Assembly: GCF_006345805.1 (NCBI RefSeq)
Contig: NC_043008.1
Coordinates: 35,154,001 to 35,218,000 of the forward strand
Length of the DNA stretch: 64,000 nt
Direction of reading: 5' to 3'
From: Octopus sinensis
Taxonomy: Eukaryota
Shown here: piece after piece, positions 2,879 through 62,302 of the stretch
How positions within the stretch are numbered: position 1 is the first letter of the stretch
Layout of the letters: every line of letters starts with the position of its first letter
Notes under the pieces: generated by a model
Database searches by the model: none
Told to the model about the DNA's origin: nothing
The model's input: the letters and a program-made list of their open reading frames with translations, nothing else
Made by a program: the position numbers and the translations under genes

Positions 2879-4084
2879 ACCGGGTGCGAAGGGTATTTGA
2901 GGACAGTTTTGGAATAATATAAAACGACTTTATATCAGCATAAATAAATATGTATTTGAATAAAAAATTGTGCAATTAGTCTTGATAATGATTTTTTAAG
3001 TAACTTATTCTATGAAACTGCCTTCAGCTTCCATACGGGACCGAAACCGCCTGCATACTGACGCTATATGGTCCATATTCATTTCGGACAATGGCAGTCT
3101 TCAGTGAAGCTATGGTATTATGAGGATGACGATTAGTCTCCCTTTCAACAGCGCTTCATACATAGTAGTCCATGGGTTCAAATCTGGCGAGTTTGGAGGC
3201 CACATATTGGGTGTTACATAATCGTAAAGATTGTCTGGCAACCGTTCTTGGGTGACTAAGGCTTTATGAGAAGGTGCCGAGTCTTGTTGAAACACGAATG
3301 GCCTTTCATTACATACTTCATCAATCCAGGACTTGATAACAATTTCCAGTACCTCAATGTATTCAGCAGCATTAAATCTAAGAACCTGTGGAAAAAAGTG
3401 GGGAGGCATCACAAGACTTTCGCTACTCACCAATCTAAAAGCCATCACAGTTGCTAGAGATTTCGTGTACTTCAGAAGGATCTGCACATAACCCCCTGTC
3501 ATTTCTTCTGTTAGACTTTTGATCCTGCTCAAAGTTGTTTTCGTCAAAGAAAAACCAGAGCATGCCTTATTCATGAGGGTGTTTTCACTTTGTTAAGAAA
3601 TTGTTTTGAACGGTGACACGATTTTCCTGTGTCTTTGCAGACACAAATTGGACATGTATCGAATGTCACTATATACCAGTTCTGAGAGTCCACTCTGACA
3701 CCTGAAGTTCTTTAGCAATGAACATCATTGATCTTCTGGGGTTTTCCTCGATAATGTTTTGAACATGTATAAATTCCGGTGTCCTTTTTGTGTCTGAGCG
3801 TTCTGAATGTTTGTTTTTCTTTTTGATATAGGTGAAATATTACCATGACATGCGTCCAATTCCAAGCGAATTTTGTGTACAAATGATCTTACAACAGTTA
3901 CAAAGTTGCTAATCTCTAAATCACTGTGGTTTGCACGTATAGCAACTATGACAGCATGTTTTTCATTTCTTGAGTTAGCATGATATCTTGAAAGGGTTAT
4001 CTGAAAAAAAAAAAGATACATTAAATGATTTGAAGGTGTAATGAACTAAAAGTGAAATGTCCTCAAACACCCCTCGCACACTGT
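2879..4084 (-). mobile_element. Tc1/mariner-superfamily DNA transposon, maT (DD37D)-type, complete length but degenerate
   Basis: ORF 3110-3574(-) has FQQDSAPSH...WPPNSPDLNP; restoring a 1-nt deletion gives PLDYY, 37 residues after the second D. TIRs 2879-2905 and 4058-4084 match 23/27. N-terminal remnant in ORF 3725-4021. Confidence 0.85.
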
Positions 4085-14614: not shown

Positions 14615-15007
14615 TTCAGTCATTTGTCTGCTATCATTCAAGCCTTTCAGTCATTTGTCTGTAGTCATTCAAAGGTTTCAGTCATTTGTCTGTTGTCATT
14701 CAAGTTTTTCAGCCATTTGTCTGCATTCATTCAAGCTTTTCAGTCATTTATCTACAGTCATTCAAGGGTTTCAGTCATTCGTCTGCTGTCATTCAAGGGT
14801 TTCAGTCATTCGTCTGCTGTCATTCAAGGGTTTCAGTCATTTGTCTACAATCATTCAAAGGCACAGTCATTTGTTTTCAGTCATTTGTCTATGGTCATTC
14901 AAGGGTTTTAGTCATTTTGTCTGCAGTCATTCAAGGCTTTCAGTCATTTGTTTGCGATCGTTCAAGCCTTTCAGCCAATTTGCCTTCGGTCATTCAAGAG
15001 TTTAGTC
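14615..15007. repeat. 31-bp minisatellite, about 13 units (TTCAGTCATTTGTCTGCTGTCATTCAAGGGT)
   Basis: Tandem units read directly; variation concentrated in two 3-4 nt patches per unit. Confidence 0.92.
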
Positions 15008-27067: not shown

Positions 27068-27286
27068 GGACAGACAGACGCAAGTCAAATGGGCTCCACG
27101 TAAGTTGGTATTTTTATACGTTCAAAAGTGTATATTGACAAATATTTTGTGTTTAAAAGTTGTGCAACAACATCCACTGCAAACCTTTGATAAATATCTA
27201 CACAAAATTTTGCCCCTTGCGGGCAAAATTAAAAAAAAAGATTCTCATAGCCTTCGTGGTTTCATTTAGCCATTTTAATTTCAAAA

Positions 27287-29389
27287 ATGGCCACTGGTCA
27301 CCACGAGGCTGAGGTGCAAGTCAAGCGTGACGCAGAGACAGAAAAACAGGATGCTCTGTTAGCATACGATGAACCTGACAACAACACCACCACCAACATC
27401 GACAACAGCAACAAATACAAAACAAAGGTCGCAAGGCCAAGCACCGTCAACACCATCAGTGAGTCCACCACCAACACCGACAACAACACCATGGCAGAAT
27501 CTGCTACTAAAACTGATATCCCTGCTAAAGACATCGCCACCAATAACAATACCAACATCACCATCACCGCCACCAAAGACCGTGCCATCAATGCTACTAA
27601 TACCACTAACACCACCGCCGTCACCAAGAACGACAATAACAACAACAACAACAACAACAACAACGACGACAACAACAATTCCCTTCAACCACTGCTCACT
27701 CCATCACCAACAAGTGAAAAAATAACGACGACAAGCAAACGAAATGCCGAAATTTGCGCTAATGCAGGACTAAATTACGCAGACAATTTTCCACCCCTTG
27801 CTAGTTGCATAATCAGCAACCACAAACCTACAACCCACACCCCTGCCATCAACACCAACACCACCGGCAGTAACAACAATAACAAAACAACAACAAACTT
27901 CGCCGAGGCGATAAAAGAAAAGGTAACAAAAGTTTCGTTTACTACACAACAGATAAAAGATTGCAGAAACCTTATTACAAATGAAAACGGAAAAATACTC
28001 TTACACATACCTCAACACATACTGAATGAGGAAAAAAAGAAGACAATTGTCTATAAAATAACAAATAAAAAAACTAAAAGTCCAGAAAAGGCAAGCACAG
28101 TGAAAATAGAAAAGTACTTACGCCCCATCTGGGGATACAAGGATTATGTGACTTGGGCGAACAAGTTCGCCCACGTACAGGTGGTTTTTCAGAATGAAGA
28201 GTTGGCGAAGAAATTCTCAACGATAACCCTTCATTCTGATGAACTAACGATGACACCGAGTTACCTCGGCCAGAAGGTGACGAAGGTCATTATCAGTGGT
28301 GTCCCCCAAGTGACTACAACACTGTGGATAACATCCGCCTTAACATCCGAAATGGAGGACTTAAACATCCTAGATATCGGTGTTTCGAAAAACAAGGACT
28401 GGCTGGGAAAGAGAATAGAGTTCCTCTTCCACATAAGTCAAGACGACATCAATAAAATCCCCACCCACGTACATCTTGAGGATGGCCGCAAGTTATACGT
28501 AGTAGTCGATGGCAGAAGGCCGACGATGCTATACATGTGGCAGTGAGGCACACCTCAAAAGGAGTGCAAATCTGCCGCAAAATTACACAACAAACAACAG
28601 CCACAGGAAAAATCACAAAAGCCAGGATTATTGCCCACACCACAATATGGACAGCTAGTCAAGAAGCTGTATGCGGAAATGCAGGAAAAACAACAAAGAA
28701 CAAGCCAACCCAACCAAACAACACCAACACCAGCGCCAAGAACAGAATCATCACCACCAACAACAAATAAACTAATTCCAACACCAAGAATAACAACGAA
28801 GAAGACAAGCACCAAGGATGTAGGAGAGACAATAACCACAACAAACCCCCAAGCAACACCCTCCCCGCGCACCACAACAATATCTACAACCGCACAAACA
28901 CACCCAGACGCTTTACCCTTGCCCCCTGCTGATTCATCAGACTTTTCATCTAACGATGAAAGTTCGACAGAATGGCAAATAGCCACAGGGGGGGTAAAAG
29001 AAAAAGATCAAGAAAAACCAAACAAGAAATCGCAACCAAAGCAGGGAGATACCTGAACCCTGAAAAATCCATACACAACAAAACAAGCACCAACACCACA
29101 AAACAATGCTATCAGCGATAGACACCAAGACTCCAAACTAATGGAGTACATCACAGGATACACAAACATTTGTGAAGATGACTTTAAAAATAGCAATCAT
29201 CCACGCACTACACCACCCAAACACATCAAAATACTACACATCACACAAACACAACACCACAAACTCAAAGCCCTCTTCCCAAATGCTGTAGGGGGTTTCC
29301 AGAAATATCTGTCCCAAAAACTGTATAAAAACCTCCTCGAAGACACATCAAAGAACGAGGAAGCTAAAACTTTCGACACAAGTAAGTAA
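27287..29389 (+). pseudogene. Tx1 ORF1 (Thr/Asn-rich N-terminus, probable RNA-binding core, CCHC gag knuckle), disrupted
   Basis: ORFs 27287-28546, 28631-29056 and 29141-29389 are all in one frame. Knuckle CYTCGSEAHLK(K)EC is recoverable across +1/-1 indels at about 28526/28560. One in-frame TGA at 29054. Confidence 0.8.
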
Positions 29390-29439
29390 CTCTCTGTACT
29401 TTCATTTTTGTGTTTTAAAGCACACACCCCAATAGAATC

Positions 29440-32400
29440 ATGGTCAAGATTGGTTGTGTGAATGCGCGTGGCTTGGGGTCTCCTTGGAAACAAGGATACC
29501 TCCTAAATGACATCAAGTCACATGATTTGGGAATCATAGCCATAAGTGAGACCAGACTCCACGAGCCACGGGCCCTAAAGTCCATGTTTGGCGGACAGTT
29601 TAACATTTATTTCGCTCCCTGTCTGCCGAGAATGGGCGGTAGTGGCACCGCGGTACTTTTTCACAAGAGCCTGGATCTCGAAGTCAAGACGATATTCGTA
29701 GACCCGGAGGGTAGACTGATCGTTCTGGATGTTGACAGCAGCAATGGGTGCGCTTTTCGACTCGTATCAGTCTACGCACCGCCCTTAACAGGTCGGGCGG
29801 ATTTCTTTCGACGTCTAGAAGTATTCTTGGGAACGTCTCGTCCTTTACTCTTAGTGGGGGATTGGAATGCTACCTTGGACACGCATGTAGACTACGTGGG
29901 TAGAGACAGAAACAGAAGGGGATGCAAATGCCTCAGAGACCTGCTCAGACGATTCCAACTGTCTGACAGGTACCGACTCGACCACCCAAATGCACCAACG
30001 TGGACATGGAGCAACCGCAGTGGGTCGTCGAGATCGTATCTAGATAGGATACTGTGTAGGACAGTAGACAAGGATAACTTAGGATGTCCACAATTCCACA
30101 CAGTCAGCTACACGGATCACAAATTGGTGACGTGTACGCTAGACTTAGATAAGGCACATAGACAGGGTCCTGGGTACTGGAAACTGAAAGCATCATTCCC
30201 GTCCAGACAAGTTTTCAGAGACCGGATTAGCACACTAGTAAAGAGGGCTTTGACGGGAGCCATCATCAACAACAAATGGTGGTTTGCCCTCAAGAGAGCA
30301 GTAAAAGCAGAAGCGATAAGGTACAGCAAAGCACTAGCATAGATAGAAATAGAGTAGAGGGTGAGCTAGTTAAGAAGCTAGAAGAGGCAATTAGAAGCGG
30401 CATCGCATCCGACGTTTTGGCGGCGAGGTTGGCCCTCGACCAACACTTCAACGCCAAACACGAAGGATGTGCTGTCAGAGCTAGGATGCGTGCTCTAAGG
30501 AACGAAGGTGTTGGAGCCGCGAGAGAGGCAACAAAGCCACCATTCGGTCACTGGTAGATGAACAGGGGCGCGAATTGCTCGAGCCAAGTAAAATGTGTGA
30601 GGCCTTTCAGCAGCATTTTGCCCGACTGTTCGGGACGAGTGGAGGGCAAGAACGTAGGGTAGACTTCAGTGCCTACCTACATAGCCTGCCACGACTCTCG
30701 ACAAGAAAGGCAGGGTGCTGCGAAGGTGCCATCACGGCGGCGGAAGTGCAGGAAGCGATAGCAGAATGCTCGAGGGACAAATCACCGGGTTTGGATGGTC
30801 TACCCTACGAGTTTTACAATTGTATGCCAGACTTGTTTGGAGACGTCTTGGCAGCGGTATACTGCAACTGGCACAAAACGGGAGCATACCCGGTTTTGTG
30901 AGTCGAGGAGCTGTAACTCTGCTGAAGAAAGATCCAAACAAGGGAAACATTATAGATAACTTTAGACCAATCACGCTGCTCAATGCAGACCTGAAAATTT
31001 TGACAAAGGTGTTAGCCAAGAGGTTGGCGCTTGTCATCGAGAAACTGGTCGACAACGCACAAACGTGCGCCGTGCCGGGCCGGAGCATCCATAACAACCT
31101 CCATCTGATGCGCTACATCATAGACAGGGTAGTTAACGAACCTGGCATGGGTGGGGCCCTGATCAACTTGGATCAATCGAAAGCCTTTGATAGGGTAGAC
31201 CATCGATACTTGGAGGCAGTCCTGAGAGCGGCTGGTTTCGGTCCCGTCTTCCGCGGCTGGATAGCTGCCTTGTACAGAGGCATCCGTTCGGTAATTCGCG
31301 TAAATGGACATCTATCGAGACCTTTCGACATTGCACGTTCGGTCCGTCAGGGATGTCCCCTCTCGGCGCTTCTATACGTATTGACTCTTGAGCCACTACT
31401 GCGGAAGCTGGCGACTCTAAGGGGCATCCCGCGAGAATTGGGAAGCGGGACGAGCGTGTCTGCATACGCGGACGACGTCACCGTCATAGTGTCAAGCCAC
31501 GAGCACATCGAGCGGGTTGGCGAGACACTGAAAGACTACGAAGCAGTGACAGGAGCAAAAATCAACCGGGAAAAGTCAGTGGGCTTGTGGCTCGGCACTT
31601 GGAGAAGCAAGCCCATGCCGTCCACCAGTACCTCCGTCGTGGGACGCTGGACAGACGGCCCGGTTGAGTTGATCGGGGTCTGGTTCGGTCCGGACCTCCA
31701 AATGGAGAAGAACTGGAACGAGATAACGAGTAGGGTGGTCACTCTCGCCCAGCAATGGGCCGAGAGGAAACTGTCCCTAAAAGGTCGGGCGGAGGTGGTG
31801 AACGCGTACATCGCGTCCATCATCTACTACCGCCTGACCGTCGTACCTTGTCCCGACCCTACCATCACCAAACTAGAACGCATCCTCTTCCGCTTCTTGT
31901 GGAAAGGATGCGTCCCGATGGTCAGGCGATCCATTTGCTGTCAACACCCGTTAAAAGGAGGGCTGGGCATGCCGTGGTTGATGATGCGCAGACACGCGCT
32001 GAGACTGCGACATCTCCGGCTCTATGTAGACGACGATGAACAGGTGTGGTCGCCGTTTGTGAGGCACGCATTCCCGCAACTCGTCTCCATGACCGAACTA
32101 CAGTCGTGGATCAAAAAGAGGCCGAGGAAGGGCGAATGGCACCGCGAGTGTCGCGTTGTTCTCAAGCAACTCTGCCGTCCCGGGTCGACCTTGAGTGACT
32201 TCAACACAACCAAAACATTCTATAGGGGATTAGTGGAGGGGAGGTACGACGACGAGCTCGGGGCAAACCTGGGCGTCGACGAGGAATACCTGACCCGCCT
32301 GTTTCAAACGACTTTCGGCCCGGGACCTATGGACAACTTCCAGAGATCCCTGGCCTGGCGGTGCTACCGAGAAGCGCTACCCGTTCGGGATAAGCTCTAT

Positions 32401-32848
32401 AGGCATGGCTCGAGAAACACGGGGCCGACCTGCCCGAGATGCGGGCAGAGCGACTAAACCGCTCTGCACGCAATCGTGCAGTGTCCAGCAATTTCCGACC
32501 TGTGGGCTTATGTCGAACGACTGCTGTCACGTGTGGGACGAGTCGGTTTATCAGCCGAGTCTATCGTTAATATCGTCACGCCTCCTTCCTTCAAACGGGA
32601 AGGAAGAGCTATTTTTATCATACTTGTGGCTATGGCGAAAGAATGTATCTGGTGGACGCGCTGAAAGGATTGAGACAAACACTTTCCTCTCTGGTCAATC
32701 TCTCATCAACTTCTTCAAGTATCACTTGAAGAAAAAAGTGAGAGTAGAGAGGCAAGTTTTGTCTAGTGAATGTTTTAAAAAAAGATGGGTGAATGTAGCA
32801 AGGATGGCACGTATGAATGACGAAGCCACCTTGACTATGATTCTATGA
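29440..32848 (+). pseudogene. Tx1 ORF2: apurinic endonuclease + reverse transcriptase + C-terminal zinc finger, disrupted
   Basis: APE: CVNARG, ISET, VYAP, GDWNA, SYLDR, YTDH, GYWKL. RT: SPGLDG, FRPITLLN, KAFDRV, VRQGCPLS, YADD at 31465-31476. CPRCGQSD*TALHAIVQC with TAA at 32455. Frameshifts near 30340, 30525, 30870 and 32670. Confidence 0.93.
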
Positions 32849-58960: not shown

Positions 58961-59214
58961 TACGCTCAAATAGAGTCTGTTCCTTACAAATATACAAAAC
59001 GGAAAGTTTACCAACATACATGTAGTGTTCTGCAAAGATTTACAAACAGAGAATAATACCTTTCACGTAAATCTTGTAGCAGACAGGCTTCCTCGAATTT
59101 GAACATGGAATGTTTAAGTTTGAAAGTCAAAAGAGCCAGCGAATACTATTACTATTTTTGGTAATATTGACAAGAGAAAGTTGCCACTAACAACTGATAT
59201 TAATACATTTGGTA

Positions 59215-59650
59215 AAGTTAGGGCGGCGTGCTAGCAGAATTGGAGGCGGCGAGCTGGCAGAAACGTTAGCACGCCGGGTGAAATGCTTAGCGATATTTCG
59301 TCTGCGTTACGTTGTGAGTTCAAATTCCGCCGAGGTCGACTTTGCCTTTCATCCTTTCGGGGTCGATAAATTAAGTACCAGTTACGCACTGGGGTCGATG
59401 TAATCGACTTAATACCTATGTCTGTCCTTGTTTGTCCCCTCTGTGCTTAGCCCCTTGTGGGTAATAAAGAAATAGGTATGCTAGCAGAATTGTTAGCTCG
59501 CCGGTCAAAATGCCTAACAGCATTTCGTCCGACTTTACGTTATGAGTTCAAATTCGCAGAAGTCGACTTTGCCTTCCATCCTTTCGGGGTGAATGAAATA
59601 AGTACCATTTGAGCACCAAGATTGATGTAATCAACTTACCCACTTTCTCG
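59215..59650 (+). mobile_element. Young family A SINE (59243-59478) nested in the head of an older related SINE
   Basis: 14-bp TSD TGCTAGCAGAATTG at 59229-59242 and 59479-59492. Confidence 0.9.
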
Positions 59651-59729
59651 AAGTTACTGGATAATTTTACCAATATATTCGGAGTTGTTTTATTTTGTTT
59701 GTCCTGTCCTTGAACCCTAATACAACATC

Positions 59730-60457
59730 GGGATCTTTACCTTTTGACCTACAGATTTAAAAAAATAATTTTTTGTAACTAAACACTTTCAAACTTCGGA
59801 CACTGGTAGAGTGTGTCATATAAAACATGTTTTACTCTCAGCATTTTTGAGAAAAACTTATATTTACGAAGTTATTTCACATTAAAGTAGTCTTATTTCG
59901 GTAATTTCAACCAATCAATGACGTTTATTCAGCTGAATAAAATTACTGCCGTTGTTTGTCAACACAACTATCGGCGGTGTATTTTTCATTTGTCACTGTT
60001 ATTTATGACATCGTTCGATCGTTCGTACTGGTTTTAGCTTTAAGGTTTTAGAGTTAGGGTTTTAGGGTTAGGGTTAGGGTGTTAGGGTTATGTTTTAGAT
60101 TGGGCTTAGGGTTAGGGTTTAAGGGTTAGGGTTAGGTTTTAGATTAGGGTTAATGTTTTAGGGTTAAGGTTAGGGTTGTCATAAATAACAGTGACAAACG
60201 AAATATGCACCGCCAGAAGTTCTTACTGGCAAACAACAGCAGTAATTTTATTCAGCTGAATACATGTCATTGATTGGTTGAAATTATTGAAATAGGACTA
60301 CTTTAACGTGAAATAACTTTGTAAATATAAGCTTTTCTCAAAAATACTAAGAGTAAAACATGTTTTATATGACACATTCTACCAGTGTCCGAAGTTTGAA
60401 AGCGTTTAGTTACAAAAAAATATTTTTTATATCTGTAAGTCAAAAGGTAAAGATCCC
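59730..60457. mobile_element. Non-autonomous foldback/MITE: 281-bp inverted arms around a TTAGGG-rich core
   Basis: Arms 59730-60010 and 60177-60457 are reverse complements (GGGATCTTTACCTTTTGAC.. / ..GTCAAAAGGTAAAGATCCC). Confidence 0.9.
60040..60176 (+). repeat. Interstitial telomere-type repeat (11 perfect TTAGGG plus variants)
   Basis: Counted directly. Confidence 0.9.
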
Positions 60458-61624
60458 AACAGCGACTGGACAGGAAATTTTCCAGCCAATCGTCTTTGAC
60501 GCACTTTTTGATAAGTATTGACAGACATAAAGAAAAGTTTAATTTTCGCGTCTAGGACTCTTATGGAATATTCTTGAACAGTTTAGCAAGTTTATAAGAC
60601 ACCCAGAATTCAGCTAATTATAGAGATTGTTCTAATTGTAGCTGAATATGGCCAATGTTAATAAGAGGTCTCTCCACTTTTATCTTTCAGCAATTTCAGT
60701 ATTTCTTAATTTAACAAGTGAAACGAAAATACAACAAATTGGTAATTACAAATAGGAAAATGTTTAATGTTATTAATTAACAATGTTGAAGATAATTATT
60801 TCTTATTAGCTTGTCATGACTTGATTATTTACTATGTTAATCATAACATAACAGCAATCTCTTAACACATACACACATCGTAGAAAGTTACCAAATAACT
60901 AGATAACATCAGAAAGATTTTATTTTTACAAGAGAGATACAGCATGCAATTATCGGATGTTCGTTGAAATGTTTTAGAACATCACATAAGCTTTTTAGGC
61001 GCGAAGAACTTTTCATTTTGTCTGTCAATGCTTAACAAAAACAGACGTTAAATACAATTGGCTGGGAAAATGTCAGTAGACGTTATAGAAGATACAAGCA
61101 TAATCTTTGAAAAGTGCATGCAAAATCCTGTAATAAAACCACCCAAATAGAGCATTAAATGGTTTGCTCAGCTATAAAACTTCAGTTTTGGAGTTTTATA
61201 GCTGAAGAAACTAATTAATATTCTATTTACTGTAACTTAATATACGGTTCGACTATAGATGTCTTCAACTGTTTACATATTAGATATTGATTCGAGTTAG
61301 AATAAACAGAGTCTGCAAAAGATTTGTCGTTCAACTAACCTAATAATATTTTATTCAGTACATATTTATAGAATATTATTTAATAGTAATATGCACTTTT
61401 TTTTATATTTCCACTGAATCGAATGAGCATTATATTAATTTTGGTTTTGTAGACATTAGTAAACACATTTTAAAAGTTGACTTAGTAACAACTGACAAGA
61501 TAAAATTAAAATATATATTTATTATTTACTATTAAAATGCATATTTATTAAGAAACAATTTAAATTAGAATAATTAAAGACTTCTATTGTTTACTGCTGA
61601 AATAACTAAGGAACTTTTTAAGCA

Positions 61625-62302
61625 TATGAGATGCATTCCAGAAGTTTTGAGACTTTTTAGAAGTACTAGCTAGCAATAATCTATCCTAGATTATTGCAAT
61701 TTTTGCATATCATTGCTATACATGTAATAAGCTGACCTCCTGCCAACTTTTGTTATTCCTATTTGAAGGAGATGACTGTAACAGCATTTTGAACGCACCC
61801 CACTAAATATTGCTTGTCACAGCTGACGAGTGACGAGTTTGCAGAATGCAGCCGGGACGTAAAGGCAATGTCGAAGCTCGATATGCAATAAACTTTTGTG
61901 TTAAACTGGAGAAAAATACTACAAAATCTTATGAAATGCTCCAGATTGGTCAGGGGGTTAAGTTGTATGAGCCGAGTAGCAGTTCACAATTCCGTACTGG
62001 TAACCATCTACTTGACAGAGACAGCAAAACTATCTCTTACCCTTTTACAATCCCCCAAGTTGAGGAAGAACCTCAGGAGCAGTCGTTTTGAATACATTGG
62101 AGATGAAGGAAGCTGTGAAAAGGTCCAGAACACTTTTATTTTCAAGGACCTCCATGAGGCCTTCACGAAGTGGCTGGAGCACTAAAACAGGTACTTTGAA
62201 GTCAGAGGATCCTACATTGAAGGAAATTACCTTTGTGCTTCTTTGAAATAAATAAATGCCTCTCCTGAAAAGAGTTTCAAAACTTCTAGAATACACCTTG
62301 TA
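61625..62302 (+). mobile_element. Internally deleted mariner element with both TIRs
   Basis: TIRs 61625-61654 and 62273-62302 match 24/30 and include terminal TA. N-terminal RYAINFCVKLEKNTTKSYEMLQ; C-terminal PKLRKNLRSSRFE..HEAFTKWLEH. Confidence 0.85.

What the first reader, a model, noticed from the sequence alone, without database searches (positions are those of the whole stretch)
59730..60457. Foldback element carrying telomere repeats between 281-bp inverted arms
Seen: a 728-bp unit with arms of equal length (281 bp) and GGGATC..GATCCC termini. Flanks are AACATC / AACAGC (possible 6-bp TSD, 5/6). The 166-bp core holds 11 perfect TTAGGG, including GGGTTAGGGTTAGGGTGTTAGGG. Each arm also contains perfect or near-perfect palindromes (TAAAACATGTTTTA; TTATTCAGCTGAATAA). 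Known: TTAGGG is the molluscan telomere repeat and four G-tracts can fold a G-quadruplex. Inference: a non-autonomous DNA transposon that disperses interstitial telomeric/G4 sequence as the loop of a giant hairpin, potentially recruiting telomere-binding proteins. The superfamily is unassigned.
Basis: partly seen in the sequence, partly recalled or inferred. Interest (0 to 1): 0.72.

Follow-up and report, generated by a model that had tools for sequence, protein, structure and literature searches.

The report
Octopus hairpin transposon with telomere-like centre
A 728-base non-coding piece of an octopus-type genome is built like a dead "foldback" jumping gene, with two 281-base mirror-image arms around a decayed telomere-like repeat; it is real, but only one copy could be found, so its claimed role in spreading telomere sequence is untested.

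Summary
Window 59730-60457 is a 728-bp unit with two 281-bp inverted arms (90.5% identical), sharp GGGATC/GATCCC ends and AACATC/AACAGC flanks. The 166-bp centre carries 11 perfect TTAGGG, all on one strand.

New findings:
- The arm differences are real evolutionary decay (16 transitions, 5 transversions; 7 of 21 substitutions at CpG), so this is not an assembly artefact.
- The 5/6 flank match occurs by chance in about 1-2.5% of trials.
- The centre is not raw telomerase product. It is a 21-bp spacer plus a degenerate array (77% identical to perfect TTAGGG) arranged as three 44-46-bp higher-order units. These units differ from each other more than the arms do.
- The host is an octopod, judged from LINE and SINE relatives.

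Most likely this is an old, non-coding, long-TIR (foldback/MITE-like) DNA transposon copy with a telomere-derived minisatellite as passenger.

The key test failed for lack of data. No second copy was found in the window, in 42 kb of two octopod genomes, in three contig collections or in two protein libraries. Family status, superfamily and whether the core is family-wide remain open. Recruitment of telomere proteins is unsupported. Interest is modest.

The parts
59724..59729 (.). Left copy of the putative 6-bp target-site duplication (AACATC)
   Evidence: Matches 60458-60463 at 5/6. Chance probability is 1.1% at n=6, and 2.5% for any TSD-like match.
59730..60010 (+). Left arm (long terminal inverted repeat, 281 bp, 31% GC)
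   Evidence: Inverted repeat with 60177-60457 at 90.5% identity. The first 19 nt are identical in both arms and unique in the window. There are no tandem sub-repeats inside the arm.
59821..59834 (.). Perfect 14-nt palindrome TAAAACATGTTTTA in the left arm (partner at 60354-60367 in the right arm)
59924..59941 (.). Perfect 18-nt palindrome TTTATTCAGCTGAATAAA in the left arm (partner, 14 nt perfect, at 60249-60262)
60011..60031 (+). Non-telomeric spacer TCGTTCGATCGTTCGTACTGG, present only on the left side of the array; it contains (ATCGTTCG)x2
60032..60176 (+). Degenerate telomere-like array. All G-rich units lie on the + strand, 11 are perfect TTAGGG, and the tract is 77% identical to perfect (TTAGGG)n.
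60043..60088 (+). Higher-order unit 1 (46 bp, starts AGGTTTTAGA)
   Evidence: TRF period 44 x 3.0 copies. Pairwise unit identity is 79-81%. In the permutation test, 0 of 1000 shuffles reached the observed value.
60089..60132 (+). Higher-order unit 2 (44 bp)
60133..60176 (+). Higher-order unit 3 (44 bp)
60057..60087 (+). Canonical G-quadruplex motif GGGTTTTAGGGTTAGGGTTAGGGTGTTAGGG
   Evidence: One of only two G3+N1-7 x4 motifs on either strand of the 64 kb.
60102..60131 (+). Second canonical G-quadruplex motif GGGCTTAGGGTTAGGGTTTAAGGGTTAGGG
60177..60457 (-). Right arm (long terminal inverted repeat, 281 bp)
60458..60463 (.). Right copy of the putative 6-bp target-site duplication (AACAGC)

Best explanation
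This is one old, inactive copy of a non-autonomous cut-and-paste DNA transposon of the long-TIR type, built like a foldback element or a large MITE, sitting in repeat-rich, gene-poor DNA of an octopod genome.

Shown:
- There are two 281-bp arms that were once near-identical and have since decayed neutrally.
- The ends are sharp, there is no coding capacity, and the flanks match 5/6.
- The centre is a 21-bp spacer plus a telomere-hexamer-derived minisatellite of three 44-46-bp units.

Inferred:
- A transposase supplied in trans recognised the conserved ~20-nt termini, and possibly the sub-terminal palindromes. It cut with a 6-bp stagger and inserted the element.
- The central array is passenger DNA. 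It began as a TTAGGG tract, captured or added at the mid-point of an internally deleted or centre-broken progenitor. It then degenerated and grew by unequal exchange or slippage of a 44-bp unit, not by telomerase.
- Because the array and its units are more diverged than the arms, the core was probably already present in the parent copy. It would then have travelled through at least one transposition.
- No present function is implied. As single strands the element would fold into a 281-bp hairpin with a G-rich, G4-capable loop.
For: Structure and age:
- The inverted arms are each 281 nt, 90.5% identical, and end abruptly at GGGATC/GATCCC.
- It is the best inverted repeat in the window.
- The arms differ by 16 transitions, 5 transversions and 6 gap columns. 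Seven of the 21 substitutions are CpG transitions. This is genuine germ-line decay, with K2P 0.08.

Transposon-like features:
- The flanking 6-mers match 5/6, p about 0.011 to 0.025.
- ORFs are at most 53 aa. None has a relative among 5.8 billion proteins or 1.84 billion representatives.
- There is no Rfam or tRNA match.
- The arms hold 4 of the roughly 6 complex 14-nt palindromes in the window.
- The single-strand fold is -238.6 kcal/mol, z = -60.

The core:
- It has 11 perfect TTAGGG, all in one orientation.
- It is only 77% identical to a perfect array. That is 34 differences over about 23 units, roughly 1.5 per hexamer. About 0.24 per hexamer would be expected if it had been perfect when the arms were last identical. 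'Old' mammalian ITS show 0.29-0.40 (PMC2246262).
- The three 44-46-bp units are 79-81% alike. Their periodicity beats 1000 of 1000 unit shuffles.

Context:
- The setting is a TE-dense octopod sequence with SINEs, a LINE, a Tc1-like remnant and a second IR-bounded element 7 bp away.
Against: - No second copy was found anywhere. There is one copy in 64 kb, none in 20 kb of Octopus bimaculoides or 22 kb of Argonauta hians, and none in the metagenome, prokaryote-genome or viral contig collections beyond chance 19-mers.
- The TSD is imperfect, rests on a single copy, and no empty site could be recovered.
- The termini (5'-GGGATC) and a 6-bp TSD do not point to any superfamily I can name with confidence.
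- No autonomous partner was seen.
- The 'core older than arms' argument assumes similar mutation rates in arms and minisatellite and no gene conversion between the arms. Both assumptions may be wrong.
Confidence: 0.55

Rival explanations
1. It is a transposon copy as above, but the telomere-like core is private to this copy. After insertion the long palindrome broke at its centre, through hairpin or cruciform cleavage. The break was repaired with telomerase-added or captured TTAGGG repeats, which later decayed and expanded in place.
For: - The array sits exactly at the symmetry centre, where long palindromes are prone to break (general knowledge).
- Telomerase-mediated insertion of TTAGGG at internal breaks is documented in mammals (PMC2246262).
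- The array is strictly one-directional.
- The asymmetric 21-bp spacer on one side only looks like a repair junction.
- Only one copy is known, so nothing shows that the core is shared.
Against: - The array is about six times more decayed than the arm divergence predicts.
- Its 44-bp units (19-21% apart) are more diverged than the arms (9.5%).
- The shared GGTTTTAGA variant in all three units shows block duplication of an already degenerate tract.
- Faster mutation of a G-rich minisatellite could still reconcile these points.
Confidence: 0.2
2. It is not a mobile element. It is a local inverted duplication formed once by replication template switching or fold-back repair next to a pre-existing interstitial telomeric tract, which acts as a G4 fork barrier. 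The right arm is then simply an inverted copy of the 281 bp lying left of the tract.
For: - It is single-copy in everything searched.
- G-rich telomeric tracts are known replication obstacles (general knowledge).
- Fold-back inverted duplications at breaks are documented, although at much shorter lengths (PMC11724301 abstract).
Against: - The 5/6 direct repeat immediately outside both arm ends is not expected under this model (p about 0.01-0.025).
- The architecture, size, AT-richness, sub-terminal palindromes and the TE-dense neighbourhood are typical of MITE or foldback elements.
- Documented templated inverted insertions are tens of bases long, not 281.
Confidence: 0.17
3. It is an assembly or long-read chimera artefact: a read that folded back on itself created a false palindrome.
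For: Palindromic chimeras are a known long-read artefact (general knowledge).
Against: - The arms differ at 27 of 284 aligned columns. Substitutions dominate, with a 3:1 transition bias, and one third of the substitutions fall at CpG. An artefact would give identical arms apart from random indel errors.
- The centre is structured sequence, not an adapter.
Confidence: 0.02
4. It is a functional hairpin locus, such as an hpRNA, siRNA or miRNA precursor, or an exapted regulatory or telomere-protein-binding site, rather than junk.
For: - The predicted hairpin is very stable.
- MITE-derived small-RNA genes are known in other taxa (PMC3086885 abstract).
- The core holds the only two G4 motifs in the window.
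Against: - There is no Rfam match, even at E<=1.
- The arms show neutral-looking decay, including stem-breaking changes and indels.
- No conservation data are available.
Confidence: 0.03

Closest known systems
Tandem-repeat-containing MITEs of molluscs (DTC84 of Donax trunculus; pearl/CvA of oysters) - PMC3879986
   Same: - Short, non-coding mobile-element architecture in a mollusc.
- A central array of a few tandem repeats sits inside flanking 'cassette' sequences.
- The array length is shaped by unequal exchange.
   Different: - DTC84/pearl have only short inverted repeats in the flanks, a microsatellite at one end of the array, a putative AA target duplication and roughly 160-bp core repeats.
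- They were later linked to Helentrons (PMC7492417).
- Here the flanks are 281-bp near-perfect inverted arms, the putative TSD is 6 bp, and the repeat unit is 44 bp built from telomere hexamers.
Foldback-type DNA transposons (Drosophila FB, Galileo, Tetris; Meloidogyne Tm1) - PMC4079207, PMC3573991, PMC3169594
   Same: - The long terminal inverted repeats make up most of the element (77% here).
- There is no coding capacity.
- The element forms a hairpin when single-stranded.
- Tandem repeats are associated with the element.
   Different: - In FB, Galileo and Tetris the tandem repeats lie inside the TIRs. Here the arms have none and the repeats form the central loop.
- Those elements are kilobases long. 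Their TSDs are 7 bp (Galileo, P superfamily) or 8-10 bp (FB/Tetris, Mutator-like), not 6 bp.
- No sequence similarity was tested or expected.
Short interstitial telomeric sequences inserted at double-strand breaks by telomerase - PMC2246262
   Same: A one-directional TTAGGG tract lies at an internal chromosomal site, flanked by non-telomeric DNA.
   Different: - Those ITS are mostly shorter than 50-100 bp and nearly exact, with 0-0.4 mismatches per hexamer. They have no higher-order period.
- This tract has about 1.5 differences per hexamer and a 44-bp periodicity, and it lies at the centre of a 281-bp inverted repeat.
Tetrahymena Tel-1 transposon-like elements with internal telomeric repeats (Cherry & Blackburn 1985, seen only as a reference in PMC2831315)
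   Same: It is a precedent for non-terminal telomere repeats being physically part of transposon-like elements.
   Different: There the telomeric repeats sit at the ends of the elements, in a ciliate germ line. Here they are the central loop. I did not read the paper itself.

Membership tests
MITE / non-autonomous TIR DNA transposon | Terminal inverted repeats with sharp ends | tested here: met
   The arms are 281 nt and 90.5% identical. Similarity stops exactly at GGGATC/GATCCC.
MITE / non-autonomous TIR DNA transposon | Target-site duplication of fixed length flanking the element | tested here: inconclusive
   AACATC/AACAGC match 5/6, with chance 1.1-2.5%. This is a single copy, and no empty site was recovered.
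MITE / non-autonomous TIR DNA transposon | Small size and no coding capacity | tested here: met
   The element is 728 bp. The longest ORF is 53 aa. There are no protein relatives.
MITE / non-autonomous TIR DNA transposon | Multiple dispersed copies in the genome | not testable with these tools
   The source genome is not searchable. There is one copy in the window and none in 42 kb of octopod loci. Contig collections gave only chance 19-mers.
MITE / non-autonomous TIR DNA transposon | Termini shared with an autonomous, transposase-encoding partner (superfamily assignment) | not testable with these tools
   Nothing else in the window carries the termini. The Tc1-like remnants at 3113-4045 and the ORFs at 61834-62182 are unrelated to the arms.
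Foldback elements (FB/Galileo/Tetris type) | Very long TIRs forming most of the element | tested here: met
   562 of 728 bp (77%) is arm sequence.
Foldback elements (FB/Galileo/Tetris type) | TIRs internally made of tandem sub-repeats | tested here: not met
   TRF finds tandem repeats only at 60010-60177, and none inside either arm.
Foldback elements (FB/Galileo/Tetris type) | TSD of 7 bp (P/Galileo) or 8-10 bp (Mutator/FB, Tetris; PMC4079207) | tested here: not met
   The flanks match 1/7, 2/8, 5/9 and 2/10, against 5/6 at length 6.
Mollusc tandem-repeat MITEs (pearl/DTC84, Helentron-associated) | Central core repeats plus a microsatellite at one array end, short flanking inverted repeats, AA target duplication (PMC3879986) | tested here: not met
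   A central array is present. There is no microsatellite module. The arms are 281-bp inverted repeats. The flanks are AACATC/AACAGC, not AA.
Telomerase-generated short ITS | Near-exact, one-directional (TTAGGG)n without higher-order structure, inserted at a break | tested here: not met
   The array is one-directional. It is only 77% identical to a perfect array, and it has a significant 44-bp period.
Telomere-telomere fusion ITS | Head-to-head (TTAGGG)n(CCCTAA)n | tested here: not met
   There is no CCCTAA anywhere in the element.

The most novel reading that the evidence does not exclude
The element belongs to a multi-copy octopod transposon family whose consensus carries the telomere-derived, G4-capable minisatellite as the loop of a 281-bp hairpin. 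Transposition, rather than telomerase repair or chromosome fusion, would then have seeded many interstitial telomere-like tracts across the genome. Those tracts could act as fragile sites, as binding sites for telomere proteins, or as substrates for chromosome healing.
Probability: 0.3. Interest if true: 0.55.

Novelty: new member of a known kind. Interest (0 to 1): 0.3.

Why it matters
If the core is family-wide, this would be a clear animal example of a DNA transposon dispersing telomere-like, G4-forming arrays. That would give a mechanistic source for interstitial telomeric sequences other than break repair or fusion. It would also supply a ready set of loci for testing the effect of such tracts on replication, recombination and chromosome rearrangement in cephalopods, whose genomes are heavily reorganised.

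If the copy is unique, or the core is private to it, this is an ordinary decayed repeat. It is useful only as a reminder that TTAGGG tracts can evolve into minisatellites at palindrome centres.

Tried and rejected
Searches for other copies:
1. The exact 19-nt terminus was scanned in metagenome, viral and prokaryote-genome contig collections. The three hits extend no further than the 19-mer and are chance matches. Two more arm k-mers in viral contigs gave nothing.
2. I tried fishing for copies through mis-called ORFs. A composite of all six reading frames of both arms against 5.8 billion proteins gave 0 hits. A profile of the longest arm ORF against 1.84 billion representatives gave 0 hits. Exact look-up of 10 window ORFs found none in the collection.
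3. I sampled related genomes through TE proteins of the window. I fetched loci from an unnamed NCBI assembly (L004), a JGI metagenome (L005), O. bimaculoides (L006), an unrelated ENA genome (L007) and Argonauta hians (L008). None holds an arm copy by blastn or nhmmer. These loci did establish the octopod origin.
4. An empty-site reconstruction from SINE paralogues in the window failed. The insertion lies beyond the alignable SINE tail.

Readings rejected:
- The adjacent inverted-repeat element is not interrupted by this one, so it gives no empty site.
- Head-to-head telomere fusion is rejected because there is no CCCTAA.
- An assembly artefact is rejected because of the CpG-biased substitutions.
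- A known RNA gene is rejected by the Rfam and tRNA scans.
- PIF/Harbinger (3-bp TWA TSD) and piggyBac (TTAA) do not fit, because the flanks do not match.

Literature: searches found no description of a foldback element or MITE with a telomeric core in molluscs.

Full report
**What is there.** Window 59730-60457 is a 728-bp unit. Its first and last 281 nt are inverted copies of each other. Blastn gives 90.07% identity over 282 columns. A global alignment gives 90.5% over 284 columns, with 16 transitions, 5 transversions and 6 gap columns. Similarity ends abruptly at GGGATC on the left and GATCCC on the right. The outermost 19 nt are identical in both arms and occur nowhere else in the 64 kb. 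It is the longest and cleanest inverted repeat in the window. As a single strand it would fold into one long hairpin (-238.6 kcal/mol, z = -60 against shuffles).

**Is it real and non-random?** Seven of the 21 substitutions between the arms are CpG-to-TpG/CpA transitions, and transitions outnumber transversions 3:1. That is the signature of germ-line decay of once-identical sequences, not of a fold-back read artefact. The K2P distance between the arms is 0.08, or about 4% per arm if they started identical. The copy is therefore old, plausibly of the order of ten million years. That age is an inference, since no octopus rate was applied. The 5/6 flank match arises by chance in 1.1% of random position pairs at length 6. 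It arises in 2.5% if any TSD-like match of 4-10 nt is accepted. Four of the roughly six complex 14-nt perfect palindromes in the window lie in the arms.

**The centre.** The 166-bp core is not a plain telomere tract. It starts with a 21-bp spacer (60011-60031) containing (ATCGTTCG)x2, present only on the left side. The remaining 145 bp is a degenerate array with every G-rich unit on the + strand. It is 77% identical to a perfect (TTAGGG)n, with 18 mismatches plus 16 gap positions over about 23 units. That is roughly 1.5 differences per hexamer.

TRF reports a period of 44 with three copies. The three units are 60043-60088, 60089-60132 and 60133-60176. Each begins with the same variant, GGTTTTAGA, and they are 79-81% alike. 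Shuffling the order of the hexamer-like units never reproduced this periodicity: observed 0.776 against 0.676 +/- 0.026, with 0 of 1000 shuffles reaching it. Telomerase cannot write a 44-bp period. The array therefore grew by duplication of an already degenerate block, and it is a telomere-derived minisatellite.

The core also holds the only two canonical G-quadruplex motifs on either strand of the whole window.

**Relative age of core and arms.** If the tract had been perfect when the arms were last identical, about 0.24 differences per hexamer would be expected. About 1.5 are observed. Mammalian ITS older than 6-14 My show 0.29-0.40 (PMC2246262). The 44-bp units differ by 19-21%, against 9.5% between the arms. 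Taken at face value, the degenerate, triplicated core predates the divergence of the arms. On a transposon reading it would already have been in the parent copy. Two caveats apply. G-rich minisatellites may mutate faster than unique DNA, and gene conversion between the arms could make them look younger than they are.

**Coding or RNA function.** ORFs in the element are at most 53 aa. A composite of all six frames of both arms found nothing among 5.8 billion proteins. A profile of the longest arm ORF found nothing among 1.84 billion representatives. Rfam found nothing, either at gathering scores for the whole window or at E<=1 for 59200-61200. A tRNA scan was also empty.

**Context and host.**
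- The window is 31-37% GC outside a LINE and is packed with microsatellites.
- It contains a LINE with ORF1, endonuclease and reverse-transcriptase ORFs at 27251-32845. Its best protein relatives come from an unnamed NCBI assembly (72%), the octopod Argonauta hians (66%) and, more distantly, a cuttlefish.
- A ~230-bp SINE is present in ten or more copies. It recurs at 87-90% identity in Octopus bimaculoides chromosome CM046616.1. Only its 3' half recurs, at about 74%, in Argonauta. The source is therefore an octopod close to Octopus.
- Two SINE copies lie in tandem directly to the left of the element (59244 to about 59690).
- A second, unrelated inverted-repeat-bounded element (about 60465-61077, arms about 110 nt, 75% identical) starts 7 nt to its right.
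- No host gene was recognised among the ten ORFs scanned against Pfam. Apart from the two LINE domains, nothing matched.

**Search for other copies: the decisive test, not achieved.** The window has one copy, by exact, mismatch-tolerant, blastn and nhmmer searches. The 19-nt terminus gave only chance 19-mer hits in the metagenome and prokaryote-genome collections and none in viral contigs. Two further arm k-mers gave none. The source genome is not in any searchable DNA collection. Its ORFs are not in the protein collection. The octopod DNA I could fetch, 20 kb of O. bimaculoides and 22 kb of A. hians, has no copy. An empty site could not be reconstructed from SINE paralogues. Copy number, TSD consistency, core conservation and an autonomous partner all remain untested.

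**Interpretation.** The best-supported reading (about 0.55) is an old copy of a non-autonomous long-TIR DNA transposon. It would have inserted with a 6-bp duplication, carrying a telomere-derived minisatellite as passenger, probably inherited from its parent. The rivals are:
- the same transposon, with a core acquired in place by centre-break repair (about 0.2);
- a one-off local inverted duplication next to a pre-existing telomeric tract (about 0.17);
- a functional hairpin locus (about 0.03);
- an assembly artefact (about 0.02).

A head-to-head telomere fusion is excluded by the absence of CCCTAA.

**Comparison with known systems.** The element works like a foldback element or large MITE. 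It fails two defining features of the Drosophila-type foldback families: tandem sub-repeats inside the TIRs, and TSDs of 7 or 8-10 bp (PMC4079207). It resembles the tandem-repeat-containing MITEs of bivalves (DTC84/pearl, PMC3879986; Helentron-associated, PMC7492417) in carrying a short central array. It differs from them in its long arms, its putative TSD and its lack of a microsatellite module. It is not a typical telomerase-made ITS (PMC2246262). I found no paper describing a foldback element or MITE with a telomeric core in molluscs. I could not consult Repbase or Dfam, so 'not catalogued' is unproven.

**Verdict.** The element is most simply a new member of a known kind, a long-TIR non-autonomous DNA element with internal tandem repeats. 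The idea that it disperses telomere sequence and recruits telomere proteins is unproven. A genome-wide copy census would settle it in minutes.

Noticed in passing
window 59244-59478 and 59480 to about 59690: Two tandem copies, from different subfamilies, of a ~230-bp SINE lie directly left of the element. The window holds ten or more copies. The family recurs at 87-90% identity in Octopus bimaculoides (L006), and its 3' half at about 74% in Argonauta hians (L008).
   Followed up: partly
window about 60465-61077: A second, unrelated inverted-repeat-bounded element of about 613 bp (arms about 110 nt, 75% identical, ends ACTGGACA.../...TGTCAGT) starts only 7 nt right of the foldback element. The putative right TSD is therefore sandwiched between two IR elements.
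   Followed up: partly
window 27251-32845 (+): A LINE with three long ORFs: an ORF1-like ORF of 431 aa, an Exo_endo_phos endonuclease and an RVT_1 reverse transcriptase. It is much more GC-rich than its surroundings: the 4-kb bin 28001-32000 is 49% GC, against about 35% elsewhere. The closest proteins are only 66-73% identical, and the only named species among them is the octopod Argonauta hians (66%).
   Followed up: partly
window 3113-4045 (-) and 61834-62182 (+): A Tc1-like transposase remnant lies at 3113-4045. Its relatives carry the DDE_3 domain, and it is 60% identical to O. bimaculoides LOC106873612. Two overlapping ORFs 1.4 kb right of the element look like a transposase HTH region, but neither gave a Pfam hit.
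   Followed up: partly
window 14615-15007: There is a 31-bp minisatellite (TTCAGTCATTTGTCTGCTGTCATTCAAGGGT, about 9-12 copies) with a 93-bp higher-order period.
   Followed up: no
window 59715-59720: A single CCCTAA hexamer lies 10 nt left of the element, in the opposite orientation to the core repeats. With 9 CCCTAA in the window, this is probably chance.
   Followed up: no
window 61165-61200: There is a small perfect hairpin, AGCTATAAAACT-(10 nt)-AGTTTTATAGCT, in the DNA right of the second IR element.
   Followed up: no
L005 (JGI metagenome 3300037598, contig Ga0314843_0099506): A metagenome contig encodes a LINE reverse transcriptase 73% identical to the window's. That sample therefore contains cephalopod-like host DNA.
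   Followed up: no
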